DNA from: Octopus sinensis
Taxonomy: Eukaryota
DNA length: 42,318 nt
NCBI RefSeq assembly: GCF_006345805.1
Contig: NW_021835152.1
Coordinates: forward strand, 1-42,318
Reading direction: 5' to 3'
The translations under genes were made by a program, and so were the position numbers. Position 1 is the stretch's first letter; the number at the start of each line of letters is the position of its first letter. This document shows, piece after piece, positions 2,271-42,188 of this stretch. Under the pieces are notes generated by a model. It had not been told where the DNA came from and did not search any database. It saw only the letters and a list, made by a program, of their open reading frames with translations.

Positions 2271-2364
2271 AAATTAAGTACCAGCCGCGTACTGGAGTCG
2301 ATCTAATTGACTGGCCCCTTCCCCCAAAATGTCGGGCTTTGTGCCTTGAGTAGAAAGGAATATT
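2271..2364 (+). mobile_element. tRNA-derived SINE family A, 3' half
   Basis: aaattaagtaccag...gtcgatctaattgactggcccc...gtgccttgagtagaaa matches the fuller copy at about 27510-27598. Confidence 0.75.
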
Positions 2365-2744
2365 GTATGTAATATGAAATAAATGACATTCGTTCACCGA
2401 AACGTACGTAACATTGTTTTGATTTTTCTTTTCTTCAATTAAAATTATTGTTATTCATTCTGTGAGGATTCTAACATAGCAGTTTGATATACATGCGTTG
2501 GATTAGCGGAGTGTGCTTTTAATAATTGGCCGAAGTACAGCTTATCGTTCTTTGGTTAATTGAAAGGTGCAACCTTTACATCGATAACCAGGTTCCAGCA
2601 TGAAGCGCTACCAAAGTGATTGCCAGGATTTTACCTAAGCCCTCAATTACACACACACATAGACGCACGCACAGATACACACATGTACACACATACATAT
2701 GTGCGTGCATGATTTGTTTATTCGTCTGAAAAGGTATGCATGCA

Positions 2745-2789
<45 letters not shown>

Positions 2790-3003
2790 GTACATGTATC
2801 CATCAGTGCCTCTGTGGTTGGGTGCAGGACTGGGGTAGAAATGATTAGAGCAAAGTATTTAATTTGTAGTTTAATGGACAGAGGAAAGAAAGGATGCCGG
2901 GTGCAAGATAAGAAGCGGGTACCCTGGATGGGATTGTGTCGGGCGGTGGCCAGGAAGCAGAAGATAGATAAGGAGATGAAACAACACATCTGTGAGCTAA
3001 TAG

Positions 3004-3050
<47 letters not shown>

Positions 3051-3682
3051 TGTATCTGTGAGTATGTATGTAATGTATGCGTGTGTATATGTATATACAT
3101 GTTACGTATGTACGTACATACATACATATAAGCGTATACAGAACGCAGCATGTATAAGAACCCGAAAACAGATTCAAAAGCAGTTTAACAACAGTTTTGT
3201 TTTTTTCTGAAGCCTTTGCAATGACAAATTAAACAGATGTAAATAGATCTCGTAATTCTCTTTGCTGAGCGAACAAAAAGGACAACTAAAAGCAATAATG
3301 GAAGAGTGAAAGGACGGGGTTTGAGAGAAAGAAGGTTATTAGGGAGTTGTATATAAATGTGTAGAGGGGTGAACTGAAGGGTTGGGAAGATGTTTAGATC
3401 TCAGGGTTTGCTTAGAAGAACAGATAGATAGAAGGATAAGTCGATAGGTAGGTATGTTGGTGGATGAACAGATACTCGGTGACGAGGTAGATAAATAGAC
3501 AAATGGCTAGGAAGACAGATAAACAGAATGAAGGAGTTGGATGGGGAGAAATAATGCCGAAGGGTAGATAAATGATTAGAATATAGGAGGGCAGGTAAAC
3601 AGTTGTACAGATATAAGGTACATGAAAGCGGGTGATGCAAATGAGTGTTTTATGCAACAAGTGCATAATTACACGAAACAGC

Positions 3683-3721
<39 letters not shown>

Positions 3722-4894
3722 GTGTTTATATTAAAAGTTGACATTTTTGGTACGAGATACTCGACAATGTAATCATCTGGGTCTTTTCTTGCTGTTACGT
3801 TTTCGTGCCAACCCAAAAGCCGAAGAGATTGGTTTCCCTCTCTCCAAACTCGTGTGCCACAGAATACAATGGATCTGTTGATTGCTCACACCAAGGTGCC
3901 ATAGAGCTCTGTTGACCTGGGACTTTACAACAACAACTATAGCTCTGATATTTTATTTTAACCGGTCCCGGAAGGATGAAAAGCGAAGGGGTTAGCGGGG
4001 TCTGTATACTTATTATAATCATCTCGCAGCACATTCTTGTTCCCACATTAAATATCTACACAAATTCATGGTTCAAATATGTCTGCATATTTAACCATTT
4101 GCTTGCTAAATTTTTGTTGCGATTCACTGTCTTTGTTCAATTAATTTTGAAGCTAATGAAGAAATTAGCCAAATAACTTTGTCATGCTAGCGTTTGCAAC
4201 ATAAATAAACATTTTGATGGAAGCTTTTAATTTAGATCACTTCAAACATGAAATTTGTACCCTAGACCTTGGGGCGGTCCCAAGCGGGCTGGGATCAAAA
4301 GGATCAAAGTATTTTGTCAGTCACTCCAACTCTTGACAGTGTCGCTGGTCTACGTTTCACAGTTGAAGTTGTTTTGAAACTGGGCCTCAGTCCCCAACGG
4401 GAACCTTTTATTTACCACGGAAAATAAAAGACAAAGTCGACTACCGATGGGATTTGAACTCAGAACGGCAAGAGACGCAACGAATACTGCAAAATATTTT
4501 CTGTCCGTCATTCCAGCAATTCTGTCACGTGGTGGATGGACAAAGTCTCACCCAGTTGAGCCAAGACTAACAGTAACTAAGCGGTCGGTGACACAGGGGC
4601 AGTACTTCTTCCTATGTGGGTCACACACCCAACACAGCTCACATTCAACCAACAATTGTTCACCGCTGACGAACGACCTTTATACGTCGAAGAGGAAGTG
4701 TGCACTTTAAGAGGATTCTTTTGTTCTTAGTCTTGTTGTTGTTGTTGTTGTCGTTGTTGCAGCTGCTGTTGTTGTTGTTGATGATGATGATGATGATGTA
4801 GTTGTTTTCTTACAGTGTTATATGTGTTGTACTTTCCGTTCGTTCGTGTGATTGTCATGGCTAGAAGTAATCAGAGATAGTCAGGTCTAGAGTT

Positions 4895-4897
4895 TGA

Positions 4898-4928
<31 letters not shown>

Positions 4929-4936
4929 TGTATGTA

Positions 4937-4982
<46 letters not shown>

Positions 4983-4995
4983 CGTCCGTCCGTCC

Positions 4996-5027
<32 letters not shown>

Positions 5028-5043
5028 GTCTGTCTGTCTGTCC

Positions 5044-5095
<52 letters not shown>

Positions 5096-5103
5096 GTCTG
5101 TCC

Positions 5104-5143
<40 letters not shown>

Positions 5144-5147
5144 GTCT

Positions 5148-5181
<34 letters not shown>

Positions 5182-5187
5182 CTGTCC

Positions 5188-5221
<34 letters not shown>

Positions 5222-5223
5222 AC

Positions 5224-5301
<78 letters not shown>

Positions 5302-5302
5302 G
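4895..5302. repeat. Compound microsatellite (TATG)n-(TCTG/TCCG)n-(TATC)n-(TC)n
   Basis: Directly visible; it explains the SVCL-repeat ORFs. Confidence 0.97.
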
Positions 5303-5472
5303 CCTATTCTCTGCTTGTTTTGACATTTATGAATGTATACATGTGTACAGTGTGTGTGTGTGTGTGTGTGTGTACATGCCCTGTAGGGCGTACCCGGTTA
5401 AATAAAAGTAACATTATTACAATGTAGCTAAGGTTTACATTCAAGCGTTTCTTTTGGAATCTGTTTGTTTGA

Positions 5473-5525
<53 letters not shown>

Positions 5526-5527
<2 letters not shown>

Positions 5528-5959
5528 CTTTTATTCTTTTACTTGTTTCAGTCATTTGACTGTGGCCATGCTGGAGTAGCACCGTTTGTCGAGCAAACTG
5601 ACCCCAGAATTTATTCTTTGTAAGCCTAGTAATTATTATATCGATACCGTTTGCCGAACCGCTATTATGGGACGTAAACACACCAGCATCGGTTGTCAAG
5701 CGATGGGGAAAGGAACAAAACAGAACAACAAAACATATATATACATATATATATATATACTATATATATATATATATATTATATATAATATATATAGGTA
5801 TGTACGACAGGCTTCTTTCAGTTTTCGTTACCAATCCACTCAAAAAGTTTTGTCGGTCCGAGCCTATAGTAGAAGACGCTTGCCCAGGGTGCCACGCAGG
5901 GGGACTGAACCCGGAGCCATGTGGCTGGGAAGCAAGCTTCATACCACACAGCCACCCCT
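5526..5959 (-). mobile_element. tRNA-derived SINE family B, near full length, with internal TA tract
   Basis: Reverse complement of the copy at 7356-7770; head tggctgtgtggtatgaagcttgcttcccagccacatggctccgggttcagtccc with A/B-box-like motifs. Confidence 0.85.
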
Positions 5960-6040
5960 ATATATATATATATGTGTGTGTGTTTGTGGGTGGGGGTGGG
6001 TGTGTGTGTATATACTGACATATACAGATATTCATACATT

Positions 6041-6043
<3 letters not shown>

Positions 6044-6107
<64 letters not shown>

Positions 6108-6141
6108 AGAGAGAGATTGAGAGAGAGATTGAGAGAGAAAG
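6044..6141. repeat. (GA)n microsatellite
   Basis: Directly visible. Confidence 0.97.
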
Positions 6142-6995
6142 AAAGCTGTGATAGGAACTAGAACTATAAAAGCGGATGTCCAGCCATGGCGGATGTACTC
6201 GTAAAGACCCTTCTCACCCGCCACATTCAACCTCTCAACATTTCACTTTCCCGCCACAACATCTGTATTTTCCCGCCATTTCAACATCAACTTTTTCTCG
6301 CTGTTTTTTTATTTTATTTTAATAACTCATACATATTCATCTATCAGTTTCTCACGCGCCAGGCTTTAACGAGCTGACCTATGATGAAAGGCATTCCAGT
6401 CATGACTATCTCTTCCTATTTCTTGTAACAATGTATCAACAACCAGAATGCAATGAGTGTTCCTGTTTTTCTGGAGGAATGTCGTAATTTGAGGGAGATT
6501 TCGTTGCTATTTTTGCGAGGTTGAGTGACCACGTAGAGGTTCTCTCCTTTTTTGGTCTCTGTTCTTGTTGATGTGATTACTGCTGCTGCGGTTGCTGCTG
6601 CTGCCGCGGCTGTTGTTGTTGTTGTTGTAGTAACATCATTATTGTTGTTATTTAACCCTAAAGCATTCCTCATTGAGCAGGTTTGTGGCCCAAATGTGTT
6701 CTAATCATGACCATCCCGTCTGAATATATGTTTGGTATATCAAGGTCTACACTAGTCAGGTGTTTTTCTTGCATTAAAGTTGTGATTTTGTTTGTTATTT
6801 CGGTCACAACATTAAGAAACATCACCCGACATTCGCCTTATCACTGACAACACTAAGCGGGTAGTGGTAGGGTGGGCTCGGCCTAAGGAGACAGGGTTTA
6901 AAGCATCTCAGGTTTATTTAAAACTTGGACAGGAAAAAAAAAAGATAAACCAGAAGCACTTCAAATTTTGAAGTGTTTATCGCTTACTTTTGTAA

Positions 6996-7043
<48 letters not shown>

Positions 7044-7177
7044 ATAATGATTTTTATTATTTACCCCAAGGCTAACGGGTGAGAAATTTTGAAAAGAGGT
7101 TGAGGTTGATTTATCTGGCGGATCAATTGTAATAAAATTCCTGTCACGGAAATCTGTCGCTTGCTTGTCTGGGAATT

Positions 7178-7330
<153 letters not shown>

Positions 7331-7355
7331 GTAAGTATGTATGTGTGTGTGTGTG

Positions 7356-7769
7356 TGGTGGCTGTGAGGTAAGTAGCTTGCTTACCAACAACATGGTTCC
7401 AGTTTCAGTCCCACTGCGTGGTACCTTGGGCAAGTGTCTTCTACTATAGCCTCGGGCCGACCAAAGCCTTGTGAGTGGATTTGGTAGACGGAAGCTGAAA
7501 GAAGCCCGTCGTATATGTGTGTGTGTGTGCATGTGTGTGTGTGTGTGTGTGCGTGTGTGTATGTGTGTGTGCGTTTGTATGTCCGTGTTTGTCCCCACAA
7601 CATCGCTCGACAACCGACGTTGGTATGTCTATGTTCCCGTAACAGCGGTTCGGCATAAAAGAACGATAGAATAAGTAACAGGCATACAAAAGAATAACTC
7701 TTGGGGTCGATTTGCTCGACAAAAGGCGGTGCTCCAGCATAGCCGCAGTCAAAATAAAATAATAAAAGA

Positions 7770-7770
<1 letters not shown>
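7356..7770 (+). mobile_element. tRNA-derived SINE family B, near full length, with internal (GT)n
   Basis: Head tggctgtgaggtaag...ccagtttcagtccc; body gcctcgggccgaccaaagccttgtgagtggatttggtagacgg; tail ggcggtgctccagcatagccgcagtc followed by an A-rich end. Other copies at 5526-5959, 33749-34040 and 35285-35450. Confidence 0.85.
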
Positions 7771-7806
<36 letters not shown>

Positions 7807-7807
7807 G

Positions 7808-7838
<31 letters not shown>

Positions 7839-7847
7839 TGTGTGTGT

Positions 7848-7877
<30 letters not shown>

Positions 7878-7879
<2 letters not shown>

Positions 7880-8226
7880 CGAGGGTGAGTTAAAAAGCAA
7901 TGCCATTTTGTTTTCGTGCCTCGTCACTGGATTAATGTTTGCCTCTCTTTCATGGGGCCGAAGTCTGAAGGTGCTAAATCTGGAGACGAGGAAGTGAAAA
8001 CTGTAGTAAAGAAGTGGCTCAAAGAACAGTCACCAGAATTTTACGGGGCAGGGACACATGCTCTTATTCGAAGGTGGAACATTGCTATTGAGAGAAACGG
8101 TGACTATGTTGAGAAGTAGGGATGTGATCCACAGAGGACCAGCTTCATTTTGATGTATGATACATGTTCCTGTGTTGGTAATTATACCTGTCTTAAAGAA
8201 AATGGCATCACTTTTTGACTCTCGTA
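7878..8226 (+). mobile_element. Mariner-derived MITE / internal deletion derivative
   Basis: TA-flanked TIRs tacgagggtgagttaaaaagcaatgccattt / aaatggcatcactttttgactctcgta; transposase C-terminus DEEVKTVVKKWLKEQSPEFY...RRWNIAIERNGDYVEK. Confidence 0.88.
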
Positions 8227-8776
8227 TATATATAAAATATAGAGATAAGATAAAGCAGCCCTCCTACACACCACGTCTCTTTTCAGATTTTAATTTGTTC
8301 CAAAAAAGAATTCTTCTCGGAAATCGAGACTTCTTTTTCCTTCCTTCGCAACATAAACTTTATTCCATTCTATTTGCTGCCACAGAAGATCCCTCGTTCT
8401 CTTCACTTCCATCAACTTTTACTATTTTTACTGGGAGATATCAGGACAGTTGAGAAAAATCAACACATTTTTGTCTCCCTTACATCTGTAAAGATTTCTT
8501 GGTAAATGTTATCGGGGTTGGTTAATATATTTTAGATGAGACTGTGGCATTCATACGATCTATACTCGATGACACTTCTACGCGAGTGCGCGCGCACACA
8601 CACACAATCACACAAACATACAATTCATACATACACACATGCACATACATACATACATACATACAATACATACATACATACATACATAAATCTTTTTTTT
8701 AGAATGATGTGCATAAATATACGTATACATACAGACGTGTACATACGCGCTCAAATACACTCACGTATACACACAT

Positions 8777-8779
8777 GCA

Positions 8780-8864
<85 letters not shown>

Positions 8865-8935
8865 GTCTGTCTATCCATCCATCCATCCATCAATCCATCC
8901 ATCATCCATTCATCCATCCATCCATCCATCCATCC

Positions 8936-8979
<44 letters not shown>

Positions 8980-9054
8980 GTCTGTCTATCCATCCATCCA
9001 TCCATCAATCCATCCATCATCCATTCATCCATCCATCCATCCATCCATCCATCC

Positions 9055-9122
<68 letters not shown>

Positions 9123-9220
9123 GTCTGTCCGTCTGTCGTCTGTCTGTCCGTCCGTCCGTCCGTCCGTCCGTCCATCCATCCATCCATCCATCCATCTATC
9201 TATCTATTATCTATCTATCT
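8777..9220. repeat. Compound (TATC)n/(CATC)n microsatellite with a higher-order internal duplication
   Basis: Directly visible; the block ctgtctatccatcc...caatccatccatcatccattcatcc occurs twice. Confidence 0.95.
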
Positions 9221-9221
9221 A

Positions 9222-9957
9222 AAAGGTCGGGCGTACATCGCATCCGTCATCGAATACCACCTGACCGTCGTGCCTTGTCCCGACCCTACCATCACCAAAC
9301 TGGAACGCATACTCTTCCGCTTCCTGTGGAAGGGAAGCGTTCCGATGGTTAGCCGATCCATTTGCTGTCAACACCCGCTAAATGGAGGGATAGGCATACC
9401 GTGGTTGATGATGCGGAGACATGCGCTGAGACTGCGACATCTCCGGCGCTTCATAGACGACGGTGAACAGGTGTGGTCGCCGTTTGTGCGGCGCGCTTTC
9501 CTGCAACTCGTCTCCTTGACCGAACTGCAGTCGTGGATCAAGCAGAGACCGAGGCTGGGCGAATGGCACCGCGAGTGTCGTGTTGCTCTCAAGCAACTCT
9601 GTCGTCCGGGACCAAACTTGTGCGACTTCATTACAACAAAGGCGTTCTATAGAGGGTTAGTGGAGGGGAGGTGCGACGACGTTCTCGGGCAGAATCTGGG
9701 CGTCGACGAGATACACCTGACCCGCCTGTTCAGGACAACTTTCGGGCTGTGACCTATGGAAAATCATCAAAGATCCCTGGCCTGACAGTGCTATCGAGAA
9801 GCATTACCTGTTCTGGATAAGCTCTACAGGCACGGTTCGAGACACACCGGACCGACTTACCCGAGATGCGATCAGAGTGACGAATCCGTTCTGCACGCAC
9901 TCATGCAGTGTCCAACCATTTCGGACCTGTGGGATTATGCCGAACGGCTGTTGTTAC

Positions 9958-11633: not shown

Positions 11634-12282
11634 ATTCAGTTGAATATGGAACTTAAGTTAAAGGCACCAGAATTTGGTAGGTATTATCCATATAATTCAA
11701 AATGGGGTGATTATAATTAAAATAAGCATCAAGGATATCCAAAGGTAATGCAATACGATCGTTTTATGCGACTCCATTTAATTAAACAATGCAAGTATTA
11801 CACCAGTTTGAAAATGTTGAGCAATATTCAGCTGCATAAAATTGAAAAGACTAATTTTTATACTTATTCCATTTACCAACATCACAAAGAGGATAAGTAG
11901 GTAGACAGAGAAACAAGTTTCATCAACAGAAACATGGTAGTAATTAATATTTTTTCATGAAGACACTGCTTAGCATTTATTTAACTTTGCTATTTAGATT
12001 TACTAATGATAAGCAGTTTCTCCATGAAAAAATATTAATTACTACCATGTTTCTGTTGATTAAACTTGTTTCTCTGTCTACCTACTTATCCTCTTTGTGA
12101 TGTTGGTAAATGGAATAAGTATAAAAATGAATCTTTTAAATTTAACTAAATTCTATTTTTATGCAGCTGAAGATTGCTCTACATTTTAAAACTAGTATAA
12201 TACTTGCATTGTTTAATTAAATGGAGTCGCATGAAACGATCGTACTGCATTACCTTTGGATATCCTTGTTGCTTATGTTGAG
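11634..12282. mobile_element. Foldback (head-to-head) Penelope-like insertion with paired hammerheads
   Basis: Arms about 11722-11977 and 12005-12276 are reverse complements with scattered mismatches and one indel; TA-rich microsatellites lie outside both ends. Confidence 0.75.
12161..12250 (+). ncRNA. Type I hammerhead ribozyme (canonical core)
   Basis: AUGCAG-CUGAAGA-uUGC...GCAu-GAAA-C-GAUC-G-UA-CUGCAU: 6-bp stem I, palindromic stem III ACGAUCGU, predicted cleavage after A12244. Confidence 0.8.
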
Positions 12283-12293
12283 TATATATATAT

Positions 12294-12348
<55 letters not shown>

Positions 12349-12525
12349 CATCTATCTCTATCTATATATATGTATATATATCTATATATATGTATACATG
12401 CATACATACATACACACACACACACACGCACACACATATATATATATAAATACATCTATATATACGTATACATATATATATATACATCTATGTATGCATA
12501 TACCTACATACATACATATATACAT

Positions 12526-12561
<36 letters not shown>

Positions 12562-12675
12562 GTACATATATATACATTTATATACACACATACACACACA
12601 TATACACATAAATATACATACATAAATATATATATATGCATAAAATATATATACTTATATATATATATATATATA

Positions 12676-13051
12676 TCTCTTATTATAAAAGGCAGATTTT
12701 ATCTGCCTCCCTTTGTATCTTATAGAAATCTACAATATAGGATTTCTTCAATTACAATTTACCTAGCATTTTTAAGAGTAGAATGCATCGGGTCGTGACA
12801 GGTCCACTTTTTAAAATTTCAACCCATTAAGCAAAATTAGAGAAAACTCACATTGTGGTGTGTATGAGTCAAATGCTTCTCTTAGTGTGGGATACAGCAC
12901 ACGCAAACGCACACACACGTGTGCAACGAATAAAGTGAAACTAATTCACTTTCTGTAGTGAGTGACTATTTCACTCTACATTCCCACTTCCACTTTACAC
13001 ACATAGACACGCAAATATATAAATAAAATTGTAAGCTAACGGTGTGTGTGC

Positions 13052-18218: not shown

Positions 18219-21200
18219 GAAAGGAAGCGGTTGGAATCTCCTCATGTCCTGATCGATGATACATCAAGTGATGGTGTCACAATAAAAACACTGGTAACTG
18301 CGCAACCTGATAACTGCTACCTCATATGAGTGACAAGGAAAAAAACAAAATATTGTGAATAACGGTGGTAACGAACTGAAGCCTTTGATGGCGACAGTGT
18401 TGCACCCGGCAGGCCCAGGGATACTGGTCCGACTCCAGTCTGTCGTTATCCAGCAACGGAGCAGCACACGCGGAGTAGATGGAACAAACAAGTCAATGCT
18501 GTGGTCATGGAGTGTTACTACCTGAGTAACCCTGCAGACGAAAATGGTTCTCATACTAGGGGATACCGACAACGTATGTATGATCAATGGAGAGAAAGAG
18601 GATTGTTTCGACTTGCGGAACAGAGATTATGTGATCGAGCCAGAACAATAGGAAAAAATCGCTGGTTCACAGCAATAGAGCTCGAAGCTATCAAAAGACC
18701 GGTTTTGGAAAACAGCAGCAGAGGAAACGATGAAAATACAGTTCCTACTGATAAAAGTAAGCTCATAGCAGAAAACAGAGATGAGATCTCTAATAAACCG
18801 AAGGAAAGGAACAGTGATAGATTGCTCGATGAGAAAAATATAGAGGGTCTGGAAGAAGACATTAAAACTAATGGTGACATGACAGATGGGCAAAAGGCAA
18901 TCTGCGACAGAATAAAAGCAAAGTTACAGGAGAACGGTAGCGACGTTATTTGCAACATTAAAATGGTTGATCGGTGGAAGTTGAACCAAGAAACGAAAAA
19001 TGTGAATGAAATTCTGGATTATATCAGAACAAAAAAGCATCACAGAAACAAATAATTTGATCAAAGCAGCAAGTATTGTGGTAGCAGGAAATGTGGGTGT
19101 TGATGTCAAGAAAAAGAAATATAATGGGAGTGACAAAAGAAAAGATCCGTGGTGGAAAAGAAGAATATAGGCGGGGTTAGATATGCACGAGAAAGGCATT
19201 TCTCTGTTAGACCGAAAAGAGAAGGGGGAGTTGAAAAACGAACAAAAATACAGGGCGCTGAACAGGAAGTATAATATTGAAAGAAAGGACCTGAAAGTAA
19301 TAATGGGGGAACTGAAACAGCCCCTCGTTGCAAACATGGTAACATATGATCAAAGAATGAAGGGATACCAGCAGAACAGGTTATTCAGAGTAGATCATAA
19401 AAGATTCTACAAAGAAATAAATGGAGAGTGTACAGATGAAAAGTTGATACCAGATAACATTGAAAATCAAATGTTTTGGAGTGACATCTGGAGCAAAGGC
19501 AAGGAGCACAAGAAGGATGCTGAATAGTTGCAAGAACTGAAACAAACAGTAGTCTGTCCAAAGCAGGCAGAACTAGTAATTTCAGTTAGGGAAGTGAAGG
19601 AAATCACAAAAAACAAAAGACAAAAAGGAGCAACTGGGAGGCCCCGGGACCAGATGGAGTTCAAGGCTACTGGATCAAAAGATTTGGTGAATGTCATGCA
19701 CGAACAGCTGCACAACTGAACACCTTGTTAAATGCTGACCAGAGTGATTGACATTGGGTAGGACAGTGCTGTGCTTGAAAAACATCAAAAAAAGCAATAC
19801 GATATCCTGTTTGCCACTTATGTGGAAATTATTGACTGGAATAGCCGCAGAGTCAGTGTACGAACATCTGGGGTGGGGGCGGATGGAGTCCTGCCACATG
19901 AGCAGAAGCGTTTCAAGCGTAAGTGCAGAGACTACTGTTCGACAAAACTGTACTTAGAGATTGCAAGAGGATAAAAACTAATTTGGCCAAGTCATGGATC
20001 GATTATCGTAAGGCTTATGATATGATCCCACATTGGCAAGTGTGCAAAAGCTTCGTTCAAACGTGGTAAACTGACATCTAATACCGCGATCCAACATGAT
20101 CATAATGCATCTATCAATGACTTGGACCAAAAAGGTTTCTGTAAGTATCTTGGGGTACATTAAGGAAAAGGGATTCAACACGGATCAATGAAAGAGATCA
20201 GGAAAGAATATTACAAACGTATCAGAATGGATCTGAATACTGAACTGGACTCTCAAAATAGAATTGCGGCTATAAACTCCCTGGCGGTACCAGTTGTCCA
20301 GTATAGCCTTAATGTTATCAACTGGAATCTGAGTGATCTCCAGCATATGGACATAAAGACCAGGAAACTGATGACACTAAACAGGATGCACTACCCAAAA
20401 TCGGACATCTCCAAGCTCTATCTCCCACGAAAGGAAGGAGGCAGCGGTCTAATCCAGCTTGAAACATCCTATAAAACGATTACGAGAGGACTTCAGGTGT
20501 ACATCCAGCGTAACACCGACCAGATCATGCAGCTAAGTGAGGCAACACAAACAGAATAAGAAACTGCACCTAATCTCAAAGGAGACATATAAATGTAGAC
20601 AAGAGTTCGACCTTCCTGGTTATGATGATGATAAGAAGGACACACCACCCACTAAGGCAGCAAAAAAGTATAAAACAAAAGCCAAACAAGAAAACTTGAA
20701 GGAGACTGTGGCAAGAAAAACCATTGCATGGGCAATACGCCAAACAAGCTGAGGAAGCTGATGTAGATAGAAGAAGGATCCATCAGTGGCTGTAGAGTGA
20801 TGATCTGAAATCTGAAACAGAAATATTTATCTTCGCAGCACAAGATCAGAGGTTCCTCACCCGGAAACTATGTTACAATGATTTTCAGTACCCTAAGAAC
20901 TGGTACGAACACCATCCAGAACCAGTCACTGAAGGAGAGAATGTTACTATCCTATGAGATTATAGGATACATATAGATAGGCAAATAAATGATAAGAGAC
21001 CAGACATTGTCATCAAAGACCTAAGACAAAAAACATGCCTGTTGATTGATATGACAGTGCCTATTGATAGAAACCTCTCAGCAAATTAATTTGAAAAACT
21101 GTCGAAATATAAGGACTTTGAAATTGAGATATCTAGGATGTGGCAATTAAAAACCAAAACCATCCCTGTTGTTGTAGGTGCCCTTGGAATGATTAAGAAA

Positions 21201-21365
21201 GGCAGTGACAAATTTCTTGACCAGATCCCTGGAAAACCTATAAACTATGAGACTCAAAAAATTGCACTGACACCAACTGCCTATATTCTCAGACAGTTTC
21301 CATCTAATATATACGTGCCTTTGAGACCCGGTCAGAAGGTGAAATAAAATGCAAATCACTCGGAG
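18219..21365 (+). mobile_element. R4/Dong-type RLE LINE, near 5'-complete but internally deleted and frameshifted
   Basis: N-terminal RSRWNKQVNAVVMECYYLSNP...RGYRQRMYDQWRERG...EQRLCDRAR; RT remnants ([18 protein letters not shown]); RLE RPDIVIKD...LIDMTVP...KLSKYKD, VVVGALG. (AAT)n on both sides. Confidence 0.8.
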
Positions 21366-21636
21366 AATAATAATGATGATGATAATGATGATTTAAGCAC
21401 AAGGCTAGCAATTTGAGGGGGAAGGGTAGTCAACGCCACTGACCCTAGTATATGACTGGTAATTTATTTTATTGATCCAGGAATGATGAAAGCCAAAGAT
21501 ACCCACAGATTTGAGATAAAAATAAATACCAGTTGAGCACAAGTGTTGATGTAATCAACTAGCTCCTCCTCCTCCCCCTCCTCCTCCTCCACCACCACCA
21601 CCACCAAAATGTCAGGTCTTGTGTGAAAAGTAGAAA

Positions 21637-21662
21637 GAATAATAATAATAATGATAATAATG

Positions 21663-21699
<37 letters not shown>

Positions 21700-21733
21700 T
21701 GATAATAATGATAATAATAATAATAATAATGAA

Positions 21734-21767
<34 letters not shown>

Positions 21768-21783
21768 TAATAATAATGATAAT
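21637..21783. repeat. (AAT)n microsatellite
   Basis: Directly visible. Confidence 0.97.
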
Positions 21784-24486
21784 AACGCTACTGAGCAACA
21801 AAATCAACGCTACTGAGCAACAAAATCAACGCTACTGAGCAACAAAATCAACGCTACTGAGCAACAAAAAGAGAACAATCAACGCTACTGAGCAACAAAA
21901 AGAGAACAATCAACGCTACTGAGCAACAAAAAGAGAACAATCAACGCTACTGAGCAACAAAAAGAGAACAAAAATACTCCGCAAATATAACATCACAGAG
22001 AAAGATTTGCCTGAAATAAAAGAAAAGCTGAAGCAAGATATCCTTGCCAAAGCACAAAGGATCCGCCGGTACAAGAAACGCCAACGCTTCTTTGAAGAAA
22101 ACAAAAAGTTCAAATCCAACCCCAAAAAGTTCTACCAAGAACTGGGAAAAAATAAAATAGAAGTCACTGCAGCACCAACGGCAGAAGAATTGGAAGAATT
22201 CTGGGGAGAAATATGGTCGGCGAACGAACCACCAAAAAAAAGGAGTATCAGAATAGCAAACTCGGCATCTGAACAACTTTGGACCCCCATAACAACTGAA
22301 GAGGTCACCCAGGCACTGCAAAGACTAAGCAACTGGAAGGCACCTGGGCATGACAAGATCCCCAACTTCTGGTTGAAATATCTAACAGGAATGCACAAAA
22401 AGCTGGCTGAAAACTTTAAAAACGTACTAGAAGAGCCAGAGACAATGCCTGAATGGCTCACGAAGGGGAAAACCATCTTAATTCCCAAATTAAATGAAAC
22501 AGAAAAACCAGAAAACTACGGACCAATAACCTGCCTCCCTACTATGTTCAAGGCATTTACTGCAGTGATATCACAAAGGCTGAACAAGCACCTGGACGAA
22601 AACAAACTGTTCCCAGAAGAGCAGAAAGGATGCCGCAAAGGCTCATATGGCTGTAAAGATCAACTAATGATTAATAAAGCCATAACTGAAGACAGCCACA
22701 GAAAGAAGAAAGGCCTCAGTATGGCCTGGATTGACTACAAAAGGCGTTTGATAGCATCCCCCACACATGGATCCTCGAAACACTAGCCATTAACAAAGTA
22801 GCACCAACAATCATAAAATTCATTGAGCACTCTATGAATAAATGGCAAACAGTCCTACACCTCCAAACAAAAGAGGGACTCATGAAAACCAAAGACATCC
22901 CCATTAGAAGAGGAATATTCCAGGGAGACACACTCTCTCCACTCCTTTTCTGCTTGGCACTGTCACCTCTATCTGATATGCTAAATAGAACTGGATGCGG
23001 ATATAAATGTTACGGAAAAACGATCAGCCACCTTTTATATATGGATGACCTAAAACTATACGCTGCAAATGACAAACAGCTGGAAACACTATTAAAGACA
23101 GTTCATGGATTTACCAAAGAAATAGATATGAAATTTGGATTAGAAAAATGCGCCAAAGTAACCCTGAAAAGAGGAAAACTAGTTAAGAGTAACAACATCA
23201 CACTAGATAAAACCAATGAAATAAAAGAATTAGACCAAAGCCAAACTTACAAATACTTAGGAATCCATGAACTAGATAAGACACAACACACACAAATGAA
23301 AGAGAAAATAAAAAAAGAATATTATAGACGAGTTAGATCAATACTAAAAACAGAGCTCAATGCTAAAAACAAGATAATAGGTATCAACACTTTAGCTGTC
23401 CCAGTTACAGCTACAATATCCTTAACTGGACACGAAATGAACTGACCAAAATAGATAGGAAAACGAGAAAAATAATGACAGGATCTAGGATGCATCACTC
23501 AAAATCTGACATAGAAAGACTATATATACAACGTATAGAAGGTGGTAGAGGCCTTATACAGCTGGAAAACTACTATAAAATAACCACCATAGGACTGCAA
23601 AAAATCTACTTCAGAAGGAAGGAAAACTGATCCAGATAGCGGCAAAACACGAGCAAAACAAAAAACTGTTCTCAGTATTTAAGGAAGCTGACAAATACAA
23701 ACAAGAAATCATACCACCTAATAAACATGAAGAAGAAGAAGAAGATGAAGAAACAACAAAAGCTATAAAACAAATGAAATCCAAACTAAAAATAGAACAG
23801 CAACGAACCATGATAAAACGATGGCAAGAAAAGCCCCTTCATGGTAAATACTGGACTAAACTAAACGCAAAAGAAATAGACAAATAAAAATCCCAGCAAT
23901 GGTTGAGAAGCTCAGGACTCAAAGCAGAAACAGAGGGATTTTTAATTGCAGCACAAGACCAAAGCCTCCCCACCAGAAATTACTAAAAACATGTAATGAA
24001 AAGAAATATTACAAGTAACTGCAGAATATGTGGAGATGGACAAGAAACAATAAATCATATTATCTCTAGCTGCCCAGTCCTGGCTAAGAAGGAATATATT
24101 CACAGACATGACAGAGTTGGAACCTACATACATTGGAAGCTATGCCAACATTATGGAATAACAACAGAAAAAAAGATGGTATAGGCACACACCAGAAAAG
24201 GTCACAGAAAACGAGAAAGCAACCGTACTCTGGGATATGCCGATACACATAGATAGAGAAATTAAGGCCAACAGACCAGATATAGTTGTCAGAGATCATG
24301 AAGAAAAAAAATGCTTTCTAATTGATGTATCAATACCGGCTGATGACAACGTGTCTCTAAAAGAAATGGAGAAACTCTCAAAATACAAAGACCTGGAAAT
24401 AGAGGTAACTAGAATGTGGAATCTGAAAATAGAAATAATTCCTATCATAGTAGGTGCATTAGGCATGATAAAAAAATATTCAGACA
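21784..24486 (+). mobile_element. R4/Dong-type RLE LINE, 5'-truncated, few frameshifts, 3' end cut off
   Basis: KAPGHDKIPNFWLK, EQKGCRKG, AWIDYK, GIFQGDTLSPLLF, HLLYMDDLKLY, GLEKC, YKYLG; zinc knuckle CRICGDGQETINHIISSC; RLE NRPDIV...IDVSIP...EKLSKY. ORF pieces 22007-22786, 22834-23445 and 24237-24503. Confidence 0.92.
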
Positions 24487-31782: not shown

Positions 31783-31831
31783 GCTTCTACAGGACTAGAA
31801 CTGTTTCATTCAAATGAAATCATCAGGAAGC
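31783..31831 (-). ncRNA. Type I hammerhead ribozyme (canonical core, full stem III)
   Basis: Minus strand: GCUUC-CUGAUGA-uUUC-auuu-GAAu-GAAA-CAG-uucuaguc-CUG-UA-GAAGC. Predicted cleavage after the A at 31788. Confidence 0.85.
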
Positions 31832-32226
31832 TGGCTGTCAAAATAAGGTCTGGTATTTATACATTTAGGCAGATTTAATGGGGTGGTGGTGGGGGACGCT
31901 TTTTGGGTAAGCAGGGCGCAAACTGTCGTTCTTAGGGGAGTGGTCAAAAGAATCAGTGATAAAGTAAATAAATGAATAAATAGAATAATTGAATAGAGTT
32001 TTAGGTAAATTAGAAGACTATCGCTTTTAGTCAGTTTGTTGTTGTTGTTATTAAGTGGAGGGAAGAAGTAGATAAGTATACATGAAAGAACATATAAAAT
32101 AAATATACATACAAACCCACATACATACACATGCGAATATCCATATATATACACATACATATGCCCATGTATATACATACAGACACATACATACATACAT
32201 ACATATAAATACACAAGCACATATAT

Positions 32227-32257
<31 letters not shown>

Positions 32258-32259
<2 letters not shown>

Positions 32260-32333
32260 TATATAAAAGGGCTTAGTAAATAAATTACTTTGCCGCATAC
32301 TGAAATTTATTTTACTAAGCCCTTTTATATAAT
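32258..32333. repeat. Perfect 23-bp inverted repeat next to a TA tract
   Basis: 32258-32280 is the exact reverse complement of 32311-32333. Confidence 0.9.
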
Positions 32334-35138: not shown

Positions 35139-35466
35139 ATTCTTAACGCTCGCTTATTCATCTTTTAACTGCAAGTTAAACCTGATTTAATTAATGGAAT
35201 GTAGAGACGTAATATAGTCATCAGTACCTTATTGACAATTACGTTTTTTTCAGGTGGAATTCAGTATATGACTGAAATAAGTAAAAGGAGTGGCTGTGTA
35301 GTAAGAATCTTGCTTTCCAACCTCACGGTTCTGAGTTCAGTCCCACTGCATGGCATCTTGAGCAATGTCTTCTACCATAGCCTCGGGCCGACCAAAGCCT
35401 TGTGAGTAGATTTGGTAGACGGAAACTGAAAGAGGCTCGTCGTATATATATATCTATATATATATA

Positions 35467-35529
<63 letters not shown>

Positions 35530-35540
35530 CATATGTATAC

Positions 35541-36718: not shown

Positions 36719-36720
<2 letters not shown>
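35757..36720 (+). mobile_element. Tc1-type DNA transposon deletion derivative, interrupted by a SINE
   Basis: TIRs cacatgacagaagtaaacagccc / gggtatgtatttacttctgtcgtg; MPRTKE|LSSSQRGRIVGHSEGGHS N-terminus; C-terminus LHETWPEIRQENIRHLINNMP...TKY. Confidence 0.8.
35959..36285 (+). mobile_element. tRNA-derived SINE family C, full length
   Basis: A box TGGCTCAGCGG (35965-35975), B box GTTCGAATCC (36010-36019), followed by a non-tRNA body. Confidence 0.87.
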
Positions 36721-36756
<36 letters not shown>

Positions 36757-36765
<9 letters not shown>

Positions 36766-37148
36766 ATTGGTGAATTGAAGAAATGGAGCTGAACGCAGAT
36801 TGAACAGAAATCGTTTTATTTCATTCTACACGTGTTTCGAAAGGCACAAATTACCAAAATCCGATTGAATAATGGGACCATATTGTGTCTTTCTCTTCAG
36901 GAAGAAAAAAGGAAATCCGTTGGAAAAACAAAAACAGAACAGATGCGGAGCAAAAACAAATCGAACTATGCTCCTAAGAGCCCATGGCGAAACTGTTTAT
37001 CAGTGTATGTTGAGAACCGGTGGCTGAAGAATTCAACGGGTCAGGCATCGGTCAATCATGTGGGTGAGGGTGTATAGATGTTCTTTGTGACCGAGAATAA
37101 AGTTCTGACTATTTAAGGAATATTGGATGTTTTATAAGGGGCGAGAAA
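36757..37148 (-). repeat. Left inverted repeat (antisense pseudo-LTR copy)
   Basis: Mirror coordinates sum to 75977 throughout; the track shows identical 81-aa ORFs at 36832-37077 (+) and 38900-39145 (-). I saw no mismatch. Confidence 0.95.
36819..36907 (-). ncRNA. Type I hammerhead ribozyme (mirror copy of 39070-39158)
   Basis: Exact reverse complement of the right-hand motif. Confidence 0.85.
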
Positions 37149-37223
37149 GCGGAATTTTATAACGCCGCACTATCCAAGGCCGGTTATAGGCAGAAGGTAA
37201 TTTATATTGATCCGGCCCTTCCG

Positions 37224-38474
37224 ATGCCATCATTCGGTCATCAGGATAGGGCCGTATATAATAACATTAACATTTTAAGTAAGGACGGGAGCGCGGCGGA
37301 TGCCGGGGTAGTCGCTCCCGCATTTAATTTAGCGAACAAGGATAATTATCGGTCCGGGAGGTCTTACACTAACCCAAGACCCGTTATTCATCCGAGAATC
37401 ACCCACCCGAATGCGAGAGCTGGCGTCCCGACCCATCACACTGATAGGAATAAGCATATATGGTTTGTAATCCCCTTTGGTAAGCAGATTAGAACTAACC
37501 TCCCCCTCTTGTTTAGACAAGCCATCGCCAATAACTTCCCCAGAAATTCCAAATATTACTCCACGGTTAACTCACATAAAGTTAGGATAGCTTTCTCCAA
37601 CACTAAAAACCTCGCCCAGATAATCGCCTCCCATAATAATAGGCTACTTACTAAGACCCTATCACCTTTTTCCGGAGGCACAGCCTCTTCCGCTCCCGGT
37701 TTAATGCTCAGTAGGAATAATTATAGTAGTAATAATGATATGAGAGCCAGTACAGTGACACATAATCTCAGCTCCAGCCAGGGAGTACCCACTAGGGGTA
37801 TAGTTATAAATAGGGGTGTTGTGGTTGACGGTAACAATGGGAGTAGGGTAGAGAGCCCCAATAGCATCCCCAGCATCATTTCCCGCAATAGCAGCACCAC
37901 GGGCAGTAGCAATGACAGCACTCTGATAGATAGTGGAGAATCAGGGGTTATTCCTATAGTTAATAGTGACGTAGTGGAAAATAGAGTAGTAAGCGGCTGC
38001 AGGTCTCGGAACGAATATAGTGACAGGAACGCAGTTCTAATTTCAGAAACTAATCCTAGCAGATTAAGATTCACGTCGGCGAACTCCAAGATCAAAAACG
38101 CCGTCTACCAATGCAAGGTTTACACGGACTCAGATGTCTTCACTTATGTAGGGGCATCATCCTCAAGATTGTCTTTGCGTGTCTCCAACCATTACGCAAC
38201 TTTTCGGGACGTGAACAAGCGCCAGACCACGGGACTCAGTAAGCTAATATGGCGACTGAAGGATACGAACTTAAGCTATAGGCTGGAATGGTCAATTTTG
38301 TCGGTGGCCCTCCCATTTGATAGGGGCAGAAGACAGTGCAACCTTTGTGTCTCCGAACTCTTCCATATTTTGTTTGCCAGAGGCCGGATGGTAAACGGGC
38401 TCTTACAGTCGGCTTTTCGATGCCCCCATTGGCGGCGTTACACTTATCTGGCTTTTAATAGCGTTTATAAATAA
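37224..38474 (+). CDS. GIY-YIG endonuclease-containing C-terminal part of a Penelope-like protein (416 aa, no RT domain)
   Basis: Stop-free; the frame stays open upstream (EKAEFYNAALSKAGYRQKVIY from 37143, resembling the post-RT region). Linker HIWFVIPF...FPRNS...VRIAFSNTKNLAQIIASHNNRLL; nuclease AVYQC...TYVG...RVSNH...LSKLIWRLKD...EWSIL...CNLCVSE...MVN...CPH. Use of the ATG at 37224 is unproven. Confidence 0.8.
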   Translation: MPSFGHQDRAVYNNINILSKDGSAADAGVVAPAFNLANKDNYRSGRSYTNPRPVIHPRITHPNARAGVPTHHTDRNKHIWFVIPFGKQIRTNLPLLFRQAIANNFPRNSKYYSTVNSHKVRIAFSNTKNLAQIIASHNNRLLTKTLSPFSGGTASSAPGLMLSRNNYSSNNDMRASTVTHNLSSSQGVPTRGIVINRGVVVDGNNGSRVESPNSIPSIISRNSSTTGSSNDSTLIDSGESGVIPIVNSDVVENRVVSGCRSRNEYSDRNAVLISETNPSRLRFTSANSKIKNAVYQCKVYTDSDVFTYVGASSSRLSLRVSNHYATFRDVNKRQTTGLSKLIWRLKDTNLSYRLEWSILSVALPFDRGRRQCNLCVSELFHILFARGRMVNGLLQSAFRCPHWRRYTYLAFNSVYK

Positions 38475-38828
38475 TACCGGCACCCATAGCCCTTGGTAAC
38501 AAATTCTGAAATAGCCTTTAAGATATCTACGATTAACCACTGCAAGGGGAATTACTCCTGTAAGACAAACGGGGCTTGGTTTTGTCACAGCGGGGGGTTT
38601 CCTTGACAAGGCAGGCTTAGATGAACACACACACACATAAAACATAATATATATATATATTTTTTCTTTTTTTTCTTTTCTTTCTGCCACCCAACGGTTA
38701 TCACGGCAGTAGCCACTGACAGCCGAACGATCAAACGCACACACGTACACAAAAAATGTTTTCTACCCCTACGCCAACACACACATATATAGAACAGTAT
38801 ACACACACACACGTCTCTAAGTAGATTT

Positions 38829-39220
38829 TTTCTCGCCCCTTATAAAACATCCAATATTCCTTAAATAGTCAGAACTTTATTCTCGGTCACAAAGAACATC
38901 TATACACCCTCACCCACATGATTGACCGATGCCTGACCCGTTGAATTCTTCAGCCACCGGTTCTCAACATACACTGATAAACAGTTTCGCCATGGGCTCT
39001 TAGGAGCATAGTTCGATTTGTTTTTGCTCCGCATCTGTTCTGTTTTTGTTTTTCCAACGGATTTCCTTTTTTCTTCCTGAAGAGAAAGACACAATATGGT
39101 CCCATTATTCAATCGGATTTTGGTAATTTGTGCCTTTCGAAACACGTGTAGAATGAAATAAAACGATTTCTGTTCAATCTGCGTTCAGCTCCATTTCTTC
39201 AATTCACCAATAATGTTTTA
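38829..39220 (+). repeat. Right inverted repeat (sense pseudo-LTR)
   Basis: Reverse complement of 36757-37148. Confidence 0.95.
39070..39158 (+). ncRNA. Type I hammerhead ribozyme (canonical core)
   Basis: Stem I UUUCUUC / GAA(U)GAAA; core CUGAAGA (39077-39083); stem II GAAAGACACAA / UUGUGCCUUUC (10 of 11 pairs); GAAA; palindromic stem III ACACGUGU; predicted cleavage after A39150. Confidence 0.88.
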
Positions 39221-39581
39221 ATTTCAATTATCCGCACCAACGCACGGTTGCAACGCCAGATGGTTGTACCTCCAACCGTGCTGTTTACTGCTGTGATTTT
39301 TGCTACTAAGGTATCGGTTAAACTTTTGATTAATCTACTACAAGATTATTCATCTTTCTATTTCACATAATATATATATATTCATTCATAATATATATAT
39401 ATTCATTATATATATTCTATATATAATTCATTCTCTCTTACCTGTTTGTGTCTGCCTTCCAATTGCTGTTTTTACTGAGATCTCCCTTTTTAGTAGAAGA
39501 AATAGCTATAACCCTTTGACTGCTATTTCTAAATTCGGTATGTGGTAAGGCAATTCGTTGCTAAACCCTTTATTGCTTAGT

Positions 39582-39725
39582 ATATATATATATATTATAT
39601 ATTATATATATAATATATATATATATATATATTATTATATATATATAATATATATATATATTATATATATATATATATATATTATTATTATATATAATAT
39701 AATATATATATATTATATATATATA

Positions 39726-39776
<51 letters not shown>

Positions 39777-39783
39777 TATAATA

Positions 39784-39830
<47 letters not shown>
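39582..39830. repeat. AT low-complexity tract
   Basis: Directly visible. Confidence 0.97.

Positions 39831-42128: not shown

Positions 42129-42188
<60 letters not shown>

What the first reader, a model, noticed from the sequence alone, without database searches (positions are those of the whole stretch)
36757..39220. RT-less GIY-YIG nuclease cassette bracketed by perfect 392-bp inverted repeats, each with a hammerhead ribozyme
Seen: a stop-free 416-aa GIY-YIG ORF lies between apparently identical inverted repeats with no indels; each repeat holds a complete type I hammerhead; the left end joins a (TA)n tract; no RT motifs occur in the unit. Established: Penelope-like elements (PLEs) encode RT plus GIY-YIG, carry hammerheads in pseudo-LTRs and often form 5'-truncated copies with an inverted terminus. 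Inference: the default reading is a very young truncated Hydra-type PLE. However, truncation removed the RT almost exactly, leaving an ATG-initiated nuclease module in a TIR-like shell. That could be a one-off, a non-autonomous unit mobilised as a whole, or a source of endonuclease in trans. A read-through RNA would fold into a 392-bp duplex with a 1680-nt loop holding the ORF, masking its own ribozyme.
Basis: partly seen in the sequence, partly recalled or inferred. Interest (0 to 1): 0.9.

Follow-up and report, generated by a model that had tools for sequence, protein, structure and literature searches.

The report
Truncated Penelope-like retrotransposon, head-to-head insertion
This is an ordinary, very recent, broken insertion of a Penelope-like retrotransposon (Hydra clade) in an octopus-type genome, with two 5'-truncated copies joined head to head inside a (TA)n microsatellite, and not a new kind of nuclease cassette.

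Summary
The inverted repeat is perfect (392 nt; 36757-37148 / 38829-39220). The 416-aa ORF has a C-terminus that folds as a GIY-YIG nuclease. Each arm carries a hammerhead-like motif. (TA)20 lies at the left end, and the window holds no RT remnant of this family. The "cassette" reading does not hold. Octopus sinensis relatives encode a telomerase-like RT, a linker and this nuclease in one ORF. The window ORF is the 3' part of that ORF. It is open across the junction, which cuts a predicted RT-thumb helix. Its "start" ATG is an internal Met, absent in another copy. The element runs ~148 bp beyond the right arm as a conserved "tail" and ends at (TA)n, so the repeats are not its termini. Seven related insertions all lie in (TA)n with different 5' ends. 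Three are head-to-head with exactly one tailed end, including a mirror-image mini-copy 94-96% identical to the window. The junction has 5-nt microhomology. This matches the published Penelope-like insertion pattern. Uniqueness of the junction in the source genome could not be tested. Low interest; new member of a known kind.

The parts
36719..36758 (.). (TA)20 microsatellite: left half of the target site
   Evidence: TRF; sequence read
36757..37148 (-). Inverted, 5'-truncated partner copy (392 bp). It is the reverse complement of 38829-39220. Its outer end is the 'short' 3' end of the element and it carries no tail.
   Evidence: L001 has an inverted fragment ending at the same outer element position
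36802..36922 (-). Hammerhead motif of the inverted copy (minus strand). CUGAAGA at 36900-36894, GAAA at 36838-35; predicted cleavage after 36827.
   Evidence: mirror image of the plus-strand motif
37144..37148 (.). AGAAA: 5-nt microhomology at the head-to-head junction. It is shared by the arm's inner end and the parental ORF sequence.
   Evidence: L001 and L004 read CAGAAA|GCGGAA; the alignment starts at 37144
37149..39368 (+). Direct 5'-truncated copy (about 2.2 kb): remnant ORF, 3' UTR, hammerhead and tail. The end is accurate to about 3 nt because it abuts TA repeats.
37149..38474 (+). Remnant of the single PLE ORF: 441 codons plus stop. It corresponds to L001 ORF residue 393 onward (end of the RT thumb, linker, EN). 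The first ATG is at 37224.
37680..38078 (+). S/N-rich low-complexity insert. It occupies the position where other Hydra-clade elements carry the CxC...C zinc-knuckle linker.
   Evidence: alignment; the 441-aa ORF has only 5 Cys
38079..38471 (+). GIY-YIG endonuclease domain (VY...YVG...R...H...CxLC..E...N...CxH)
39055..39175 (+). Type I hammerhead motif. Stem I 39069-76 / 39151-58; CUGAAGA 39077-83; helix II 39084-39138 (11 bp, large loop); GAAA 39139-42; helix III of 2 bp with palindromic ACGU loop; predicted cleavage after A17 at 39150.
39207..39220 (+). Zone of the 'short' alternative 3' end. The window's inverted arm, L001's inverted fragment, the L002 copy and the L005 mini-copy all end here.
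39221..39368 (+). 'Tail': an optional 3' extension of about 148 bp. It is conserved in L001, L004 and L005 and is present at only one end of this insertion.
39366..39830 (.). TA-rich microsatellite tract: right half of the target site

Best explanation
One retrotransposition event of a Hydra-clade Penelope-like element (PLE) into a (TA)n microsatellite left two 5'-truncated cDNA copies joined head to head. The element's GIY-YIG nuclease cut the TA-rich target. Reverse transcription was primed on both DNA strands. One cDNA started at the distal ('tailed') start site and ran about 2.2 kb, giving the plus copy 37149-39368. The other started at the proximal ('short') site and ran 392 nt, giving the inverted arm. 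The two cDNA 3' ends annealed through 5 complementary bases (AGAAA/TTTCT) and were filled in.

The result cannot transpose by itself, because it has no RT. The ORF is intact, and the arms are identical, only because the insertion is very recent. The hammerhead is the family's normal 3'-region ribozyme, with a minimal palindromic helix III of the kind thought to act as a dimer in tandem transcripts. In this copy the two motifs lie on opposite strands, so any one transcript carries only one.

Shown here: the anatomy, the homology, the protein folds, the ribozyme covariation, the microhomology, and the recurrence of the architecture. Inferred from published biochemistry: priming on both strands, two RT start sites, and annealing of the cDNA ends.
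For: RT-bearing relatives. The O. sinensis L001 ORF (667 aa) runs from RT motifs (SDKT, FDIASFYPS, PMGS, YRDD) straight into the window-homologous stretch. Its model matches telomerase TERTs best (E about 1e-8, probability 1.00).

Hydra-clade signature. Full-length relatives P0015, P0029 and P0095 carry RWK/RWR, ADKT and an EN with CxxC...E...N...CxH, as listed in PMC8557442 section 11.

Nuclease. The EN folds as GIY-YIG.

Element ends. The element extends past the right arm, and the tail is conserved.

Seven related insertions, all in (TA)n. Their 5' ends map to reference positions about 38, 78 (L001 copy 2), 730, 1162, about 1464 (the window), 1645 or earlier, and about 3400. Three are head to head, each with exactly one tailed end. 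One of these, the L005 mini-copy, is the mirror image of the window and 94-96% identical to it.

Junction. 5-nt microhomology.

Hammerhead. Conserved with covariation.

Literature. Inverted 5'-truncated copies forming flanking inverted repeats, and a tail at one end only, are typical of PLEs (PMC8557442). A PLE protein cleaves and extends both strands and starts reverse transcription at two internal sites that delimit the tail (PMC11167929).
Against: The source genome could not be searched, so I have not shown that the 37148/37149 junction is unique there.

The comparison copies come from O. sinensis. Most belong to subfamilies only 70-86% identical to the window.

The tail here is about 148 bp, against the 30-40 bp described for other PLEs.

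Rfam and Pfam models do not recognise the ribozyme or either protein domain. The GIY-YIG fold matches have weak E-values.

Ribozyme activity, dual-strand priming and the two start sites are inferred by analogy with a Poseidon element of Anolis, not shown for this family.
Confidence: 0.9

Rival explanations
1. The unit is a functional RT-less module. It would be either a non-autonomous element mobilised as a whole by its inverted-repeat ends, or a source of free GIY-YIG endonuclease acting in trans for RT-bearing relatives.
For: The ORF is intact over 441 codons and the EN keeps all invariant residues. An ATG lies near the start of the disordered linker. Non-autonomous PLE derivatives are known (PMC8557442; bioRxiv 10.64898/2026.07.22.740005).
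Against: The ATG is an internal Met and is absent in L004. The frame is open across the junction, which cuts a predicted helix. The repeats are not the termini, since a tail lies beyond the right arm. Other head-to-head copies have quite different junctions: 35+3640, 48+171 and 392+2220 nt. No second copy occurs in the window. The known non-autonomous PLE derivatives are non-coding pLTR/HHR units, not EN cassettes.
Confidence: 0.03
2. The inverted arm is an assembly artefact, such as a fold-back or chimeric join in a repeat-rich region.
For: The identity of the arms is perfect. PLE tandem and inverted structures are known to cause assembly problems (PMC8557442). The region is full of microsatellites.
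Against: The same architecture is seen twice in an independent assembly (L001 and the L005 mini-copy). The arm's outer end is at the family's defined 'short' end, abutting (TA)n. The inner junction has microhomology at a coding position. A fold-back chimera would normally not have a unique 1.68-kb centre with unique flanks on both sides.
Confidence: 0.04
3. A simple 5'-truncated insertion later acquired the arm by a DNA-level inverted duplication (replication template switch), or two older arms were homogenised by gene conversion.
For: Microhomology junctions also arise from replication-based rearrangements (general knowledge). Perfect identity is compatible with recent gene conversion.
Against: The arm ends exactly at the element's alternative 3' end next to the target (TA)n, as in L001. 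It does not end at an arbitrary point or include flanking DNA. The recurrence of one tailed and one untailed end in three independent events points to the integration mechanism.
Confidence: 0.03

Closest known systems
Hydra clade of C-terminal EN+ Penelope-like elements (Craig et al. 2021, PMC8557442)
   Same: A single ORF with a TERT-like RT followed by a GIY-YIG EN. DKT instead of DKG. CxxC and CxH flanking the conserved E and N of the EN. A hammerhead is present. Insertion into (TA)n. 5' truncation and head-to-head inverted copies. Mollusca is among the reported hosts.
   Different: In the octopus copies examined, the CxCX5C zinc-knuckle linker is missing and an S/N-rich insert of about 130 aa sits in its place. 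A near-full-length copy is about 3.6 kb rather than under 3 kb. Helix II of the hammerhead is 55 nt long and escapes Rfam. No RT tree with reference families was built.
Canonical Penelope/Poseidon insertions with inverted 5'-truncated copy and 'tail' (Evgen'ev and Arkhipova 2005, as cited in PMC8557442; Frangieh et al. 2024, PMC11167929)
   Same: Inverted repeats formed by a 5'-truncated inverted copy. An extension at only one end. An AT-rich target. The ribozyme lies in the repeated region.
   Different: The tail is about 148 bp rather than 30-40 bp. No direct pLTR is present in this copy. The clade is different.
Minimal dimeric PLE hammerheads (Cervera and de la Pena 2014, PMC4209133)
   Same: Type I topology, a large helix II, a G10.1-C11.1 pair, and a 2-bp helix III with a 4-nt palindromic loop (ACGU here, AUAU in L001 and L004).
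   Different: Helix II carries a loop of about 33 nt. There is no extra nucleotide between A9 and G10.1. Activity is untested.
L1 5'-inversions by twin priming
   Same: A head-to-head junction with microhomology produced during target-primed reverse transcription (general knowledge).
   Different: In twin priming the inverted segment is a different, more 5' part of the RNA. Here the inverted arm duplicates the 3' region, so two cDNAs both started near the 3' end.

Membership tests
Penelope-like elements (EN+) | Telomerase-like reverse transcriptase in the element's ORF | tested here: met
   Absent from the window copy. Present in relatives: the L001 ORF model matches TERTs best (E about 1e-8), and a profile aligns to RT palm motifs. 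Pfam RVT_1 gives no hit.
Penelope-like elements (EN+) | GIY-YIG endonuclease fused in the same ORF | tested here: met
   The window EN model (pLDDT 87.9) has only GIY-YIG nucleases among its top five PDB hits. The catalytic-type residues are conserved. It is contiguous with the RT in P0015, P0029 and P0095. Pfam is sub-threshold (E 0.08 for L001).
Penelope-like elements (EN+) | Hammerhead ribozyme motif in the repeated / UTR region | tested here: met
   The descriptor hits only the arms and 0 of 300 simulations. Covariation is seen in 4 copies. Rfam is negative. Cleavage activity is not testable here.
Penelope-like elements (EN+) | Frequent 5' truncation, inverted 5'-truncated partner copies, and a tail at one end | tested here: met
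   Seven insertions have different 5' ends. Three are head to head with one tailed end each.
Penelope-like elements (EN+) | Partial tandem copies forming direct pseudo-LTRs | tested here: inconclusive
   There is no direct repeat in the window unit. L001 has two adjacent copies, but they are only 78% identical and are separated by (TA)n, so they look like independent insertions.
Hydra clade | DKG motif changed to DKT; RWK motif near the N-terminus | tested here: met
   L001 has SDKTRN. P0015, P0029 and P0095 have ADKT/SDKT and RWR/RWK. L001 copy 2 has IRWL. This region is not present in the window copy itself.
Hydra clade | [quoted passage not shown] | tested here: met
   The window has CNLC..E...N...CPH. 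The ORF has only 5 Cys, so there is no further Cys/His cluster. No direct alignment to CCHH-bearing clades was made.
Hydra clade | Linker with a CxCX5C zinc-knuckle upstream of the EN | tested here: not met
   It is present in P0006, P0015, P0029 and P0095. It is absent in the window ORF, P0002 and P0003, where an S/N-rich insert replaces it.
Hydra clade | Insertion into (TA)n | tested here: met
   All seven insertions examined are flanked by (TA)n.
Hydra clade | Placement of the RT within the Hydra clade in a phylogeny with Repbase references | not tested
TIR DNA transposon / stand-alone nuclease cassette | The inverted repeats are the element's termini, and the unit recurs with the same ends | tested here: not met
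   Homology continues about 148 bp beyond the right arm. The arm lengths in related events are 35, 48 and 392 nt.

The most novel reading that the evidence does not exclude
The intact EN-only ORF could be expressed, from read-through or from an antisense promoter in the arm, and supply nuclease in trans. Alternatively, a read-through transcript could fold into the 392-bp hairpin and be processed into small RNAs that silence this PLE family. Either would make young head-to-head PLE insertions a built-in source of self-regulation.
Probability: 0.04. Interest if true: 0.5.

Novelty: new member of a known kind. Interest (0 to 1): 0.15.

Why it matters
It matters little beyond annotation. The locus should be masked as a Hydra-clade PLE fragment and not called as a gene. 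NCBI gene models of sister fragments carry misleading names such as 'myb-like protein I' and 'dyrk1'.

Three points may interest PLE specialists:
- This octopus lineage has lost the zinc-knuckle linker that was proposed to go with (TA)n targeting, yet every copy still sits in (TA)n.
- The two alternative 3' ends, about 148 nt apart, appear in reciprocal head-to-head configurations. This fits the two-start-site model of PLE reverse transcription seen in vitro.
- The hammerhead variant, with a long helix II, is invisible to Rfam.

Tried and rejected
Rfam at gathering score and at E<=10 on the window, and on the more canonical L002 copy, found no hammerhead. The weak twister-P1, U6atac and miRNA hits are chance or TA-repeat matches.

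Pfam on the window ORF, the L001 ORFs and long relatives gave nothing significant.

HMM profiles against PDB sequences gave no GIY-YIG, and only a weak RT match at E 0.46. Fold comparison was needed instead.

An exact look-up of the window ORF in the gene collection found no record.

A search with the neighbouring LINE ORF gave no species identification.

Exact-match scans of metagenome contigs for the inner junction and for a hammerhead segment gave no hits. This is uninformative, because the collection is not expected to hold cephalopod DNA.

My first MFE fold was cut too short and showed no signal. The unconstrained MFE fold of the full motif does not give the hammerhead by itself, as expected for a ribozyme with a minimal helix III.

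I rejected a TIR DNA transposon, because the arms are not the termini. I rejected L1-style twin priming, because the inverted segment duplicates the 3' region.
Full report
OBSERVATION. The window is eukaryotic and very rich in microsatellites, with LINE remnants. The reported inverted repeat is real. Arms 36757-37148 and 38829-39220 are 392 nt and 100% complementary, 1680 nt apart, and the match stops abruptly at all four edges. The ORF at 37224-38474 is 416 aa. (TA)20 abuts the left arm. No RT-coding remnant of this family is found anywhere in the window by tblastn with three full-length relatives and with the RT part of the closest relative.

THE NUCLEASE. Pfam does not recognise the ORF. 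An exhaustive HMMER search found 2727 relatives (469 at E<=1e-10). They match mainly residues about 288-410 and a second block at about 75-145. In an alignment of 28 C-terminal domains the window keeps every invariant or near-invariant column: VY, YxG, R, H, T, S, W, W, CxLC, E, I, N, CxH. The AlphaFold2 model is confident (pLDDT 87.9) with beta-beta-alpha-alpha-beta-alpha topology. Its five best PDB matches are all GIY-YIG nucleases: Hpy188I, T4 EndoII and the I-TevI catalytic domain (TM 0.58 normalised to I-TevI). The E-values are weak, 0.13-0.8. I accept the GIY-YIG assignment. Craig et al. also had to use CDD/HHpred profiles for Hydra-clade ENs.

THE RIBOZYME. Rfam finds no hammerhead at any threshold. 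By hand, each arm carries a type I motif. On the plus strand of the right arm it reads as follows:
- stem I at 39069-76 paired with 39151-58;
- CUGAAGA at 39077-83;
- an 11-bp helix II with a large loop, 39084-39138;
- GAAA at 39139-42;
- a 2-bp helix III closing a palindromic ACGU loop;
- U16.1-A17, with predicted cleavage after 39150.
A structural descriptor hits only these two places in the window and nothing in 300 Markov-simulated windows. Four independent copies (the window, L001, L004, L002) keep the core. L002 has the canonical CUGAUGA and GUC. The pairs covary: 86.6% of cells are paired against 35-51% with slid partners, and six pairs change on both sides against 0-2. The helix III loop is ACGU, AUAU or AUGU, so it is palindromic or nearly so. 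This is the hallmark of the minimal PLE hammerheads thought to act as dimers (PMC4209133). The two motifs in the window lie on opposite strands, so any single transcript contains only one.

WHAT THE ORF IS. The only indexed close homologue is an Octopus sinensis protein auto-named 'myb-like protein I' (54% identity). It extends 76 residues upstream of the window's inner junction. At its locus (L001) a 667-aa ORF runs from RT motifs (SDKT, LKDHKP-like, FDIASFYPS, PMGS, YRDD) directly into the window-homologous stretch. After a frameshift, the nuclease domain follows. The model of that ORF matches telomerase TERTs best (E about 1e-8, probability 1.00), followed by other RTs. Full-length relatives of 720-760 aa carry RWK/RWR, ADKT, a CxC...C linker and the same EN with CxxC...E...N...CxH. 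This is the signature listed for the Hydra clade of Penelope-like elements, which inserts into (TA)n and was reported from molluscs among other hosts (PMC8557442).

The window ORF is therefore the 3' part of a PLE ORF, cut at L001 residue 393. That position lies inside a predicted helix (386-402) of the RT thumb, not at a domain boundary. The frame is open from the junction. The 'initiator' ATG aligns with an internal Met (PALPM) and is absent in copy L004.

TRUE EXTENT. DNA similarity to L001, L004 and L005 does not stop at the right arm. It continues to about 39368, where a TA-rich tract begins. The roughly 148 bp at 39221-39368 are a conserved, optional 'tail'. The inverted arm lacks this tail, and its outer end abuts (TA)20. 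So the inverted repeats are not the termini of the unit. The whole insertion spans 36757 to about 39368 inside a TA microsatellite.

RECURRENCE. In O. sinensis loci I catalogued further insertions of the family, all flanked by (TA)n:
- L001 copy 1 is near full length. It is preceded by a perfect inverted fragment of about 35-42 nt whose outer end is at the same 'short' position as the window's arm.
- L001 copy 2 is inserted in the (TA)n at the tail of copy 1.
- L004 covers reference positions 1162-3704 and has no inverted part.
- L002/L003 are alignable from reference position 1645 or earlier and end at the short site without a tail.
- The large L005 copy covers reference positions 730-3703.
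- The L005 mini-insertion is 94-96% identical to the window's own arm and tail. It reads (TA)n, 48 nt of inverted tail end, 171 nt of direct copy with the hammerhead ending at the short site, then (TA)n.
The mini-insertion is the mirror image of the window's arrangement. The 5' ends and junctions therefore differ in every event, and each of the three head-to-head events has exactly one tailed end. The 94-96% match also indicates that the source is O. sinensis or a close relative.

MECHANISM. The window junction shows 5-nt microhomology. AGAAA (37144-37148) is both the inner end of the arm and the parental sequence upstream of GCGGAA. On opposite strands, the 3' ends of the two cDNAs would be complementary over these five bases. 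Published work describes inverted 5'-truncated copies that produce flanking inverted repeats, and a tail at only one end, as typical of PLEs (PMC8557442). In vitro, a PLE protein nicks AT-rich DNA, extends both strands, and starts reverse transcription at two internal sites that delimit the tail (PMC11167929).

I therefore infer one integration event with priming on both strands. One cDNA started at the distal site and the other at the proximal site, and they were joined by annealing of their 3' ends. Zero differences in 392 nt and an intact 441-codon frame indicate a very recent event.

RIVALS. A functional RT-less cassette is contradicted by the internal, non-conserved ATG, the junction inside a helix, the tail beyond the arm, and the variable junctions in sister events. 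An assembly artefact is unlikely, because the same architecture occurs twice in an independent assembly and the arm ends at a defined element position. Only raw reads can exclude it. A later DNA-level duplication or gene conversion cannot be excluded, but it does not explain the regular pattern of one tailed end.

LIMITS. The source genome could not be searched. Two exact-match scans of metagenome contigs found nothing and are uninformative. No RT tree with reference clades was built. Ribozyme activity and expression are untested.

VERDICT. This is an ordinary, young, dead-on-arrival Hydra-clade PLE insertion with the class's well-known head-to-head structure. It is a new member of a known kind and of low interest. 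Side observations for specialists are the loss of the zinc-knuckle linker with (TA)n targeting retained, the long tail of about 148 nt with reciprocal end usage, and a hammerhead variant that Rfam does not detect.

Noticed in passing
window 37680-38078; P0002, P0003; L001 10700-11070: In the octopus copies examined, the CxCX5C zinc-knuckle linker of Hydra-clade PLEs is replaced by an S/N-rich low-complexity insert of about 130 aa. All copies still lie in (TA)n. This weakens the proposed link between that linker and microsatellite targeting.
   Followed up: partly
L005 4479-4694: A mini head-to-head insertion of the window's own subfamily (94-96% identity). It consists of 48 nt of inverted tail end plus 171 nt of direct copy ending at the short site, the mirror image of the window's end usage.
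   Followed up: yes
P0001, P0002, P0003, P0151 (O. sinensis RefSeq models): Fragments of this retrotransposon are annotated as genes with misleading names ('myb-like protein I', 'probable serine/threonine-protein kinase dyrk1', 'DDB_G0288805-like'). The likely cause is the low-complexity insert.
   Followed up: partly
window 18501-23445 (+): ORFs of a LINE-type retrotransposon. The homologues of the 259-aa ORF carry Pfam RVT_1, with best identity about 53%. It is broken into several ORFs.
   Followed up: partly
window 9300-9752 (+): The C-terminal part of a 347-aa ORF reads like the C-terminal region of a non-LTR retrotransposon protein. It is fused in frame to a tetranucleotide-repeat translation.
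   Followed up: no
window 2576-9300, 12256-12798, 31810-32298, 35443-35539, 39581-39830, 42130-42188: Very high density of (TA)n, (CA)n, (ATT)n and tetranucleotide microsatellites, which produce long spurious ORFs.
   Followed up: no
window 38579-38674 (+): A weak U6atac-like Rfam match (17.8 bits against a gathering score of 33) lies in the element's 3' UTR. The central part matches (CCUUGACAAGG) but most of the model is missing, so it is probably chance.
   Followed up: no
L001 12441-12500: A second copy of the family (78% identical over its 5' 950 bp) is inserted in the (TA)n at the tail of the first. This suggests the element's own TA-rich end is a preferred target.
   Followed up: partly
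window 36832-37077 (+) and 38900-39145 (-): Identical 81-aa ORFs lie in the two arms, antisense to the element. They have no homologues and are probably spurious.
   Followed up: no
L006 (Logan ERR12716959 contig, 2574 bp): A full-length 759-aa Hydra-clade ORF (P0095). It shares the TNPRP...THP stretch with the window ORF and has the zinc-knuckle linker. The contig ends in a homopolymer run, and the loose descriptor found no hammerhead within it.
   Followed up: partly
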